Both the position numbers and the translations under genes were made by a program. A DNA stretch of 64,000 bases, taken from IMG/VR virus record IMGVR_UViG_3300045996_002337, positions 248,001 through 312,000 of that record; one strand, written 5' to 3'. How positions within the stretch are numbered: the stretch's first letter is position 1; each line of letters opens with the position of its first letter. The notes under the pieces are model-generated. The model had not been told where the DNA came from. It saw only the letters and a program-made list of their open reading frames with translations, and did not search any database. Shown piece by piece: positions 11,305-11,665 of this stretch.

Positions 11305-11665
11305 TGGTTGGTTTACAAGGTGATCAACCCCGCCGTCGAGAGGTTATTAAGCTCTCGACTGCCCTTTCAGGCAGCCATACGGTAGTTTGCTTCGTTTGCA
11401 CTTAGCTGTTTTACGCTGATTAGGTCAGTCGTCTCTCCTGCCGCGTATGATCGTCTCCGAAACCCTGTCGAAACCAGGTCATCCCCATTACAAATTTCTC
11501 TGAACTTCCGGGCGCCCAGTTGTTCTTGTTTCCCCAAGCTTTGGTACTGAAAACAGTGTTGGGATGCAGTAAGAGAAATTTGTGGTGGAGATGGCGGGAA
11601 TCGAACCCGCGTCCAGAATCCTTCAAGTCACTCCGAATTACGGCAATCAACTGCATTGCTGCAGT
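11305..11665 (-). ncRNA. ssrA: Two-piece circularly permuted tmRNA; tag ANEANYRMAA
   Basis: Acceptor piece ..gcgggttcgattcccgccatctccACCA (ends 11583) precedes an intervening sequence (caaatttctct/agagaaatttg) and the coding piece GGGGATGACCTGGTTTCGAC (starts 11486); tag ORF 11399-11367. Confidence 0.92.

What the first reader, a model, noticed from the sequence alone, without database searches (positions are those of the whole stretch)
11305..11665. Phage-encoded two-piece (circularly permuted) tmRNA
Seen: the CCA-bearing acceptor piece precedes a roughly 96-nt intervening sequence closed by an 11-bp stem, followed by the GGGGAUG coding piece with tag ANEANYRMAA. Known: permuted tmRNAs occur in Alphaproteobacteria and some cyanobacteria and Betaproteobacteria; C-terminal AA is the ClpXP degron. 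Together with the PTH2-like gene, suppressor tRNAs, DksA and Hsp20 it forms a compact ribosome-rescue island (inference).
Basis: partly seen in the sequence, partly recalled or inferred. Interest (0 to 1): 0.65.

Follow-up and report, generated by a model that had tools for sequence, protein, structure and literature searches.

The report
Jumbo phage two-piece tmRNA gene
A roughly 350-kb uncultivated phage carries a complete, circularly permuted (two-piece) tmRNA gene for rescuing stalled ribosomes; the call is solid, but such genes are already catalogued in related phages, so it is a new example of a known kind.

Summary
On the minus strand, 11681-11276, lies a permuted tmRNA gene. ARAGORN gives the tag ANEANYRMAA. 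Rfam tmRNA_permuted scores 129 bits (cut-off 47) and beta_tmRNA 110.9 (cut-off 84); the alpha and cyano models fall below their cut-offs.

The gene order is an extended -10 promoter, an acceptor piece ending in CCA at 11583, a 96-nt intervening sequence closed by an 11-bp stem, then a coding piece starting GGGGAUG at 11486. The tag frame is 11399-11367, followed by a 3' hairpin.

The contig is a 349,660-bp IMG/VR virus with a terminase and no integrase. It has no SmpB, so the RNA must use the host's.

Among 35 viral homologues, the acceptor stem (G3:U70 in all), the P2 helix and the intervening-sequence stem show compensatory changes.

Permuted tmRNAs in phages are already published: 53 in a 2022 survey, including the relative XacN1 and the Stenotrophomonas Menderaviruses. 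Novelty is therefore low.

The "ribosome-rescue island" is only partly supported. Two amber suppressor tRNAs, a TraR/DksA zinc-finger protein and Hsp20 are present. No PTH2 was found. The neighbouring genes are mostly NAD and nucleotide metabolism.

The one lead worth following is a conserved tmRNA plus amber-suppressor-tRNA module in this phage clade.

The parts
11674..11681 (-). Extended -10 promoter element TGTATAAT just upstream of the tmRNA gene; the inferred transcription start is near 11667.
   Evidence: TGTATAATAG occurs 4 times in the window against 0.01 expected. All 16 TGTATAAT in the genome are on the minus strand, and one precedes the suppressor tRNAs. The Rfam beta_tmRNA model aligns its promoter-like 5' part here. 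The start site is inferred.
11583..11667 (-). Acceptor piece (the 3' part of the mature tRNA-like domain, placed first in the gene). It holds the 5' strand of helix P2 (UGCCG at 11645-11641), the T arm (11610-11594), the 3' strand of the acceptor stem (11593-11587), discriminator A (11586) and an encoded CCA (11585-11583).
   Evidence: ARAGORN places the gene start at 11675; the 5' end given here is inferred from the promoter.
11487..11582 (-). Intervening sequence of 96 nt, removed on maturation. The closing stem pairs 11582-11572 with 11501-11491; the 4-nt leader UAAU is at 11490-11487.
   Evidence: The same stem-plus-leader layout occurs in 38 of 55 viral and bacterial beta-type genes against 1.4% of shuffles, with compensatory changes.
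11276..11486 (-). Coding piece. It holds the 5' strand of the acceptor stem GGGGAUG (11486-11480, G3 at 11484 opposite U at 11589), the D-loop analogue GGUUUCGAC, the 3' strand of P2 (CGGCA at 11443-11439), a PK1-like hairpin, the tag frame and a 3' hairpin followed by UCA.
11367..11399 (-). Tag reading frame: GCA resume codon, ANEANYRMAA, stop UGA.
   Evidence: The relative L019 (tag ANEGNFRLAA) differs from this frame by three silent and three conservative codon changes, read from the alignment.
11279..11302 (-). 3'-terminal 10-bp GC-rich hairpin of the coding piece, followed by UCA (11278-11276). It has no U tract.
   Evidence: It matches the last helix of the Rfam beta_tmRNA model and appears in the fold. 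It is not called as an intrinsic terminator.
10611..10769 (-). Two amber-suppressor tRNAs (anticodon CUA), one with discriminator A73 and one with G73, behind their own TGTATAATAG element (10786-10777). They are linked to the tmRNA in this phage clade.

Best explanation
This is a functional, phage-borne ssrA gene of the circularly permuted, beta-proteobacterial type. Shown: the gene is complete, sits in the middle of a jumbo-phage genome, and its helices are kept by compensatory changes across many viral homologues. Inferred from established tmRNA biology: it is transcribed from its own extended -10 promoter as a precursor of about 390 nt, in the order acceptor piece, 96-nt hairpin, coding piece. 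The two pieces pair through the 7-bp acceptor stem and helix P2. Host RNase P cuts before G1 (11486), after the 4-nt leader. Host 3'-processing enzymes trim to the encoded CCA (11583), and the hairpin is discarded. The two-piece RNA is charged with alanine by host AlaRS (G3:U70, A73). It is bound by host SmpB and EF-Tu, because the phage has no smpB. It enters ribosomes stalled at mRNA 3' ends and directs addition of ANEANYRMAA, a degron-like tail. The likely benefit is extra ribosome-rescue capacity and recycling of truncated or read-through proteins. This would matter during an infection that degrades host mRNA, makes very heavy translational demands and expresses two amber suppressor tRNAs.
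For: Identification: ARAGORN; RF04321 at 129 bits against a cut-off of 47; RF01850 at 110.9 against 84. The alpha model scores 48.6 (cut-off 50) and the cyano model 42.9 (cut-off 70). All identity elements are visible in the sequence. An unconstrained MAFFT plus RNAalifold run on 35 viral genes recovers P2, the T arm, the acceptor stem (U:G at the third pair in 35 of 35) and the intervening-sequence stem; 25 of 37 pairs show compensatory changes. The PK1-like hairpin is 71% paired against 23-35% when partners are slid. Tags in the viral set mostly keep the AN...AA pattern, and endings in MAA recur. Phage context: a 349,660-bp IMG/VR virus, 97% complete, with a terminase, no integrase, and a protein 37.6% identical to one of Xanthomonas jumbo phage LucasX. 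There is one copy per genome. No SmpB was found here or in four other phages with permuted tmRNA. A syntenic relative (L057/L061; flanking proteins 40-70% identical) keeps the tmRNA and both suppressors. [quoted passage not shown] Suppressor tRNAs increase SsrA tagging (Ueda 2002, cited in PMC3985003).
Against: There is no expression or processing evidence: no RNA run holds this sequence, and DNA runs share at most 8% of its words. The host is unknown, so compatibility with its SmpB, AlaRS and proteases is assumed. The promoter scan with a strict -35/-10 rule finds nothing; only the extended -10 is present. The tag ends in MAA rather than the canonical LAA, so degradation efficiency is uncertain. 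Without a phage SmpB the RNA must compete with host tmRNA, which fits a replacement role as well as a supplementing one.
Confidence: 0.85

Rival explanations
1. Tag-swap or competitor. The phage RNA mainly displaces host tmRNA from the limited pool of host SmpB. Rescue then proceeds with the phage's tag (RMAA end) instead of the host's. That would change the fate of rescued proteins, or blunt a host response that depends on its own tmRNA.
For: No SmpB in this phage or in G001, XacN1, Xoo-sp13 and Marzo. Phage tags differ among themselves and several end in MAA, RAA, KAA, ANA or VMA rather than LAA. A tRNA-like-domain-only phage molecule (mycobacteriophage DS6A) inhibits host tmRNA (PMC4131195).
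Against: The tag keeps the AN..Y...AA degron-like pattern and differs from the tag of relative L019 by silent and conservative codon changes (alignment), as expected for an ordinary proteolysis tag. The idea is not exclusive of the main explanation. Nothing here measures competition.
Confidence: 0.1
2. Dedicated ribosome-rescue island. The tmRNA, a PTH2-like hydrolase, the suppressor tRNAs, DksA and Hsp20 would act together as one functional unit.
For: Suppressor tRNAs, a TraR/DksA zinc finger and Hsp20 lie within 4 kb on the same strand. The block tmRNA, suppressors, HD protein, Hsp20 is syntenic in L061.
Against: No PTH2 or Pth anywhere in the genome. The intervening and flanking genes are DNA repair, NAD salvage, purine metabolism and unknowns. 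Nearly all genes in the region share the strand, so co-orientation carries no information. XacN1 shares only the RNA genes, not the proteins.
Confidence: 0.08
3. Inert passenger: a bacterial permuted ssrA captured by the phage, or a chimeric assembly, with no role in infection.
For: Beta-type permuted genes occur as extra copies next to a standard tmRNA in Cupriavidus, Herbaspirillum and Duganella, which shows the gene moves horizontally.
Against: The gene is intact, has a phage-type promoter element, and is conserved with compensatory changes in dozens of viral contigs and in cultured phages. It lies 259 kb into a one-contig viral genome, between phage genes.
Confidence: 0.04

Closest known systems
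Permuted tmRNA of Xanthomonas jumbo phage XacN1 (AP018399; listed as 'Permuted' in Table S1 of PMC9004378)
   Same: A jumbo phage of about 350-385 kb. Beta-type permuted gene (123 bits to RF04321). Long intervening sequence (114 nt) with a closing stem. Two tRNA(CUA) suppressors within 1 kb on the same strand. No SmpB.
   Different: Tag is ANANTFDYALAA. The order of suppressors and tmRNA is swapped. The gene lies in the 65.9-kb terminal repeat, so it is present twice. Flanking proteins are unrelated. It is not annotated in the GenBank record or mentioned in the genome paper.
tmRNA of Stenotrophomonas Menderavirus phages (Marzo, Moby, Mendera, IME-SM1)
   Same: Annotated phage tmRNA, permuted, described as Betaproteobacter-class (PMC8928761). 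Identical T arm. Intervening-sequence stem plus UGAU leader.
   Different: T4-like phages of 160 kb. Intervening sequence 57-71 nt. Tag VAANDDSYTVRIAA. The gene is embedded among ordinary tRNAs, with no suppressor tRNA nearby.
Bacterial beta-type two-piece tmRNA (Rfam RF01850; e.g. Azoarcus; Sharkady and Williams 2004, as cited in PMC3985003)
   Same: Passes the family's gathering score. Same helices, the same hairpin abutting CCA with a 4-nt leader before G1, and the same 3' hairpin plus UCA.
   Different: Bacterial intervening sequences in my sample are 18-44 nt against 96 nt here. The bacterial genes come with a genomic smpB. Here the gene is viral and smpB is absent.
Two-piece tmRNA of marine OM43 phage Melnitz (PMC9004378)
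   Same: A lytic phage with a permuted ssrA downstream of an early-type promoter and no smpB reported.
   Different: Melnitz's gene is of the alpha-proteobacterial type and carries a glutamine riboswitch. No riboswitch or other Rfam family is found in or beside this gene.
Caulobacter crescentus two-piece tmRNA (Keiler et al. 2000, as cited in PMC3985003)
   Same: The experimentally proven model for a permuted precursor processed into acceptor and coding pieces that support tagging.
   Different: Alpha type (the alpha model scores only 48.6 bits here, below its cut-off). Chromosomal, with a cognate SmpB.

Membership tests
tmRNA, permuted (two-piece) form, Rfam RF04321 | Covariance-model score at or above the curated gathering score | tested here: met
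   129 bits against 47, E 6.5e-25, full model 1-213; the only such match in the genome.
tmRNA, permuted (two-piece) form, Rfam RF04321 | Permuted gene order: the CCA-bearing 3' half of the tRNA-like domain lies upstream of the 5' half, with an intervening segment between | tested here: met
   CCA at 11585-11583, G1 at 11486, 96 nt between them.
tmRNA, permuted (two-piece) form, Rfam RF04321 | tRNA-like domain: 7-bp acceptor stem, T arm with a GGUUCGAUUCC-type loop, D-loop analogue, helix P2 | tested here: met
   Rfam alignment and MFE fold. RNAalifold on 35 viral homologues recovers all of them with compensatory changes.
tmRNA, permuted (two-piece) form, Rfam RF04321 | Alanine identity: G3:U70 wobble, A73 discriminator, 3' CCA | tested here: met
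   G 11484 opposite U 11589, A 11586, encoded CCA. The U:G is kept in 35 of 35 homologues. Charging itself was not tested.
tmRNA, permuted (two-piece) form, Rfam RF04321 | Tag reading frame: Ala resume codon, short peptide with a hydrophobic ...AA end, in-frame stop | tested here: met
   GCA at 11399, ANEANYRMAA, UGA ending at 11367. U and A at -5 and -4 before the resume codon, read from the sequence.
tmRNA, permuted (two-piece) form, Rfam RF04321 | Maturation into two base-paired RNAs; alanylation; SmpB-dependent tagging | not testable with these tools
   No RNA run holds the sequence. The phage has no SmpB and the host is unknown.
Beta-proteobacterial subtype, Rfam RF01850 | Score above the gathering score, and better than the alpha and cyano subtype models | tested here: met
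   110.9 against 84; alpha 48.6 against 50; cyano 42.9 against 70.
Beta-proteobacterial subtype, Rfam RF01850 | Short intervening hairpin abutting CCA, 4-nt leader (UGAU) before G1, 3' hairpin followed by UCA | tested here: met
   Stem at offset 0 after CCA, leader UAAU, 3' hairpin plus UCA. The length differs: 96 nt here against 18-44 nt in 17 bacterial genes.
PTH2 peptidyl-tRNA hydrolase (claimed neighbour) | Match to Pfam PF01981 | tested here: not met
   No six-frame match in the whole 349,660-bp genome at E<=1. Nearby ORFs have no Pfam or PHROG hit of that kind.
attP-type tmRNA fragment of temperate phages | Only a 3' fragment of ssrA, next to an integrase | tested here: not met
   The gene is complete, with both pieces. 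No Phage_integrase domain in the genome.

The most novel reading that the evidence does not exclude
The conserved module of one permuted tmRNA plus two different amber-suppressor tRNAs (one A73, one G73) acts as a unit. The suppressors force read-through of host UAG-terminated messages; the phage itself largely avoids UAG stops (14 of 248 likely genes). The phage tmRNA, using host SmpB, then clears the resulting non-stop ribosomes and tags the aberrant host proteins for degradation. That would give host shut-off and amino-acid recycling in one step. A variant of the idea is that the fast-changing intervening hairpin (30 nt in the closest relative, 96 nt here) is released as a separate small RNA.
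Probability: 0.12. Interest if true: 0.65.

Novelty: new member of a known kind. Interest (0 to 1): 0.3.

Why it matters
The find adds one well-resolved example to a known but experimentally untouched class. No phage-encoded two-piece tmRNA has been shown to be processed or to tag proteins. For annotation, it shows that permuted tmRNAs are missed in deposited jumbo-phage records: XacN1 and Xoo-sp13 have none annotated. It also shows that at least 44 IMG/VR loci share this beta-type design. For biology, three facts give concrete experiments in cultured relatives: these phages always lack smpB, their nearest cultured relatives infect Xanthomonadales, and in this clade the gene travels with amber suppressors. 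It does not change what is known about trans-translation.

Tried and rejected
1. PTH2 (PF01981) and bacterial Pth (PF01195) searches of the whole genome were both blank. An RF-1/GGQ-domain ORF exists, but about 53 kb before the window.
2. SmpB was absent in this phage and four relatives.
3. Amber recoding of phage genes: reading TAG through gains no more open frame than reading TAA through, so the code is standard.
4. A riboswitch or other RNA family inside or beside the gene: an Rfam E-value scan of 11150-11800 gave only the tmRNA models and one chance-level hit.
5. Expression evidence: no RNA run was found, and DNA runs share at most 8% of the words.
6. Protein synteny with XacN1 and with the 350-kb virus G001 around their tmRNAs: no tblastn hit at 1e-3. 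Synteny does exist with L057/L061/L063.
7. Whether the extra permuted copies in Cupriavidus and Herbaspirillum sit in prophages: the neighbours are ordinary chromosomal genes, a transposase-like HTH protein and, 2 kb away, an integrase next to tRNA-Lys. This was inconclusive.
8. A FastTree of about 200 nt placed the window with L057, L019 and XacN1, near Cupriavidus and Azoarcus. The sequence is too short to root or to name a donor, so I make no origin claim.
9. The strict sigma-70 scan found no promoter; I rely on the extended -10 word statistics instead.
10. The papers of Sharkady and Williams 2004 and Keiler 2000 are not held. They are cited only through PMC3985003 and PMC9004378.
11. The count of structure pairs was not used for the pseudoknot, because it needs a long typed structure string. 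The counts were done in a script instead.

Full report

Yes. ARAGORN reports a permuted tmRNA at 11276-11675 on the minus strand, with tag peptide ANEANYRMAA. Rfam's general permuted model RF04321 matches 11645-11367 end to end at 129 bits (gathering score 47). The beta-proteobacterial model RF01850 matches 11719-11276 at 110.9 bits (gathering score 84).

The other two permuted subtype models fall below their cut-offs. The alpha model scores 48.6 against 50, and the cyano model 42.9 against 70. There is one such gene in the genome.

**2. Anatomy, read on the minus strand**

- **Promoter.** An extended -10 word, TGTATAAT, lies at 11681-11674. The ten-letter form TGTATAATAG occurs four times in the window against 0.01 expected, once directly before the suppressor tRNAs. 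All 16 TGTATAAT words in the genome are on the minus strand, many with TGTACA upstream. A strict two-hexamer scan finds no promoter.
- **Acceptor piece.** It holds the 5' strand of helix P2 (11645-11641), the T arm (11610-11594), the 3' strand of the acceptor stem (11593-11587), discriminator A (11586) and an encoded CCA (11585-11583).
- **Intervening sequence.** It spans 11582-11487 and is exactly 96 nt. Eleven perfect pairs close it (11582-11572 with 11501-11491), and four unpaired bases, UAAU, lie before G1.
- **Coding piece.** It starts GGGGAUG at 11486, with G3 (11484) opposite U (11589). It continues through the D-loop analogue GGUUUCGAC, the 3' strand of P2 (11443-11439) and a pseudoknot-type hairpin. 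The tag frame runs from GCA at 11399 to the UGA ending at 11367.
- **3' end.** A 10-bp GC hairpin (11302-11279) followed by UCA corresponds to the last helix of the beta model.

The 445-nt region folds with z = -5.2 against shuffles. Only the span given, 11305-11665, is slightly short at both ends.

**3. Is it a phage gene?**

The window is bases 248001-312000 of a 349,660-bp IMG/VR virus record rated 97% complete.

- The genome has a large terminase and no integrase.
- The window holds a tail-fibre-like protein, an RNA ligase and a DNA ligase.
- One 1102-aa protein is 37.6% identical to a protein of Xanthomonas jumbo phage LucasX, and more distantly related to Stenotrophomonas phage proteins.
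- The tRNA(CUA) pair is 74.5% identical to that of Xanthomonas jumbo phage XacN1.
- G+C is 51% and flat across the window.

The gene is therefore viral, in a lytic-type jumbo phage. Its cultured kin infect Xanthomonadales, but the actual host is unknown.

**4. Is it under selection?**

Four pattern scans of IMG/VR, using the T arm, the CCA and the D-loop analogue in permuted order, returned 44 loci. All that were not cut off by a contig end are called as permuted tmRNAs by ARAGORN.

I ran an unconstrained MAFFT alignment of 35 distinct viral genes followed by RNAalifold. It recovers both parts of P2, the T arm, the acceptor stem and the intervening-sequence stem.

- 25 of 37 pairs have sequences in which both sides changed and the pair is kept.
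- The U:G at the third acceptor pair is present in 35 of 35.
- The hairpin upstream of the resume codon is 71% paired, against 23-35% when partners are slid. A short second stem to its loop co-varies (CG, GC and AU at one pair), which suggests a PK1-type pseudoknot. This rests on an alignment that is not structure-aware.

Against the relative L019 (tag ANEGNFRLAA), the tag frame differs by three silent and three conservative codon changes, read from the alignment. Tags across the set mostly keep AN...AA, and endings in MAA recur.

**5. The intervening sequence**

In 38 of 55 viral and bacterial beta-type genes, a perfect stem of at least 7 bp starts 0-2 nt after CCA and ends 4-6 nt before G1. 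The leader is usually UGAU. Only 1.4% of shuffles do as well.

Seventeen bacterial genes (Azoarcus, Cupriavidus, Herbaspirillum, Duganella) have the same design, with intervening sequences of 18-44 nt. The viral ones range from 12 to 133 nt.

The window's closest relative, L057/L061, has a tmRNA 76% identical and flanking proteins 40-70% identical. Its intervening sequence is only 30 nt. The hairpin length therefore changes quickly while its base stays fixed. That is what one expects of a processing scaffold rather than a functional RNA. No other Rfam family matches inside it.

**6. How it most likely works**

The steps after transcription are inferred from established tmRNA biology (PMC3985003).

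- The precursor folds so that the two pieces pair.
- RNase P cuts before G1.
- 3' processing exposes the encoded CCA.
- AlaRS charges the RNA through G3:U70.
- SmpB and EF-Tu deliver it to ribosomes stalled on non-stop messages.
- Translation resumes on GCA and ends at UGA, adding a degron-like tail.

The phage has no smpB, and neither do G001, XacN1, Xoo-sp13 or Marzo. Host SmpB must therefore be used. The RNA may thus replace host tmRNA as much as supplement it; I keep that as a rival at about 0.1.

No expression data exist for this sequence.

**7. The claimed rescue island**

Present, all on the same strand:

- two tRNA(CUA) at 10611-10769;
- a 79-aa TraR/DksA-type zinc-finger protein at 9959-10198;
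- Hsp20 at 7460-7948.

Absent: PTH2 and Pth, anywhere in the genome.

The other neighbours are:

- a pyrimidine-dimer glycosylase;
- a WYL_2 protein;
- an outer-membrane beta-barrel-like protein;
- an HD-domain protein;
- a deoxyribosyltransferase-like protein;
- NAMPT;
- adenylosuccinate synthetase;
- an NMNAT-Nudix fusion;
- unknowns.

The "island" is therefore not a coherent rescue unit.

One element of the idea survives. The tmRNA and the amber suppressors stay within 0.5-2.2 kb of each other in four places: the window, L057/L061 (same order), XacN1 (order swapped, flanking proteins unrelated) and Xoo-sp13 (one suppressor). Each pair has one A73 and one G73 tRNA. Stenotrophomonas phage RAS14 has suppressors but no permuted tmRNA. 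The other 36 viral loci show no suppressor in the stretch held.

The phage's own likely genes rarely end in TAG: 14 of 248 ORFs of at least 150 aa, against 108 ending in TAA. This holds even though the two trinucleotides are about equally common in the genome. There is no sign of TAG recoding.

Suppressor tRNAs are known to raise SsrA tagging (Ueda 2002, cited in PMC3985003), so a functional link is plausible. With so few independent lineages, however, inherited synteny explains the pattern as well.

**8. Comparison with what is known**

- Phage tmRNAs have been listed since the mycobacteriophage Bxz1 group and phage G (PMC4131195).
- Huge phages were reported to carry tmRNAs, and some SmpB (PMC7162821).
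- A 2022 survey found 133 distinct tmRNAs in 18,146 phage genomes, 53 of them two-piece (PMC9004378). Its Table S1 lists XacN1, Mendera and Moby as "Permuted".
- The Marzo announcement describes its tmRNA as Betaproteobacter-class (PMC8928761).
- The 2025 tmRNA database counts 79 phage sequences (PMC11915505).

The kind is therefore known, and this is a new member. Smaller points that I did not find stated in those papers:

- The XacN1 and Xoo-sp13 records carry no tmRNA annotation, and the XacN1 paper does not mention one.
- The intervening hairpin is lengthened in phages.
- smpB is uniformly absent in this group.
- The gene is linked to amber suppressors.

In a sample of 150 other genomes of the class that holds both Burkholderiales and, by GTDB's classification as I recall it, Xanthomonadales, only one has a permuted tmRNA. 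Cupriavidus, Herbaspirillum and Duganella carry theirs in addition to a standard gene. The form therefore looks mobile in this class. I make no claim about donor or direction, because the tree rests on about 200 nt.

**9. Verdict**

- Observation: confirmed.
- Interpretation as a phage two-piece tmRNA: supported.
- "Rescue island": largely not supported.
- Novelty: new member of a known kind.
- Interest: 0.3.

The most novel reading still open is a suppressor-plus-tmRNA module for host shut-off and recycling. I give it a probability of about 0.12.

Noticed in passing
window 10611-10769 (-); L061 11745-12132; L004 317-475; L084 8005-8080: Two different amber-suppressor tRNAs (CUA), one with discriminator A73 and one with G73, are kept next to the permuted tmRNA in the window phage, its relative L057/L061 and XacN1. 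Xoo-sp13 has one. The XacN1 authors could not find their targets (PMC5852040).
   Followed up: partly
whole genome G000 (window = 248001-312000): TAG is strongly avoided as a stop codon of likely genes: 14 of 248 ORFs of at least 150 aa end in TAG, against 108 in TAA and 126 in TGA. TAA and TAG trinucleotides are about equally frequent in the genome. There is no evidence of stop-codon recoding.
   Followed up: partly
G000:C1:194432-194851 (-), about 53 kb before the window (L081 1432-1851): A 139-aa ORF with an RF-1/GGQ domain (63.7 bits). It has a GGQ motif and a release-factor-like C-terminal segment. It could be a second, protein-based peptidyl-tRNA hydrolase or rescue factor of the phage.
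   Followed up: partly
window 2794-2803, 3010-3019, 10777-10786, 11672-11681 (-); 16 sites genome-wide: A phage-specific promoter-like word, TGTATAAT, often with TGTACA about 16 nt upstream. All copies are on the minus strand. Several precede RNA genes.
   Followed up: partly
G000:C1:337772-338374 and 338581-339156 (-), outside the window: Two adjacent Terminase_6N matches, the second with an in-frame TGA. This may be a duplicated, split or interrupted large-terminase gene.
   Followed up: no
AP018399.1 37231-37530 and 356026-356325; MN047793.1 39030-39373: The public records of jumbo phages XacN1 (two copies, in the terminal repeats) and Xoo-sp13 contain permuted tmRNA genes in stretches without any annotated feature.
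   Followed up: yes
L064-L080 (Cupriavidus, Herbaspirillum, Duganella, Azoarcus): Cupriavidus consociatus, a Herbaspirillum and Duganella hordei have a standard tmRNA plus one to three permuted copies. The Herbaspirillum and Duganella tags end in the unusual YGT or FGT. An Azoarcus MAG has only the permuted form.
   Followed up: partly
L041 1043-1319 (-); L054 396-729 (+): The intervening sequences of two viral permuted tmRNAs contain T-arm-like words (GGTTCGATTCC, GGTTCAATTCC), as if a second minihelix were embedded.
   Followed up: no
window 1782-1871 (-): ARAGORN calls a tRNA-Ser with the unusual anticodon ACU inside the tRNA array. The array also has duplicated tRNA-Ala(UGC) and tRNA-Pro(UGG).
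   Followed up: no
window 13133-14533, 18559-19668, 14619-15881, 30746-32107 (-): The region carries an NAD-salvage pair (NAMPT and an NMNAT-Nudix fusion), an adenylosuccinate synthetase and an RNA ligase. The first three are syntenic with the relative L061 at 43-57% identity.
   Followed up: partly
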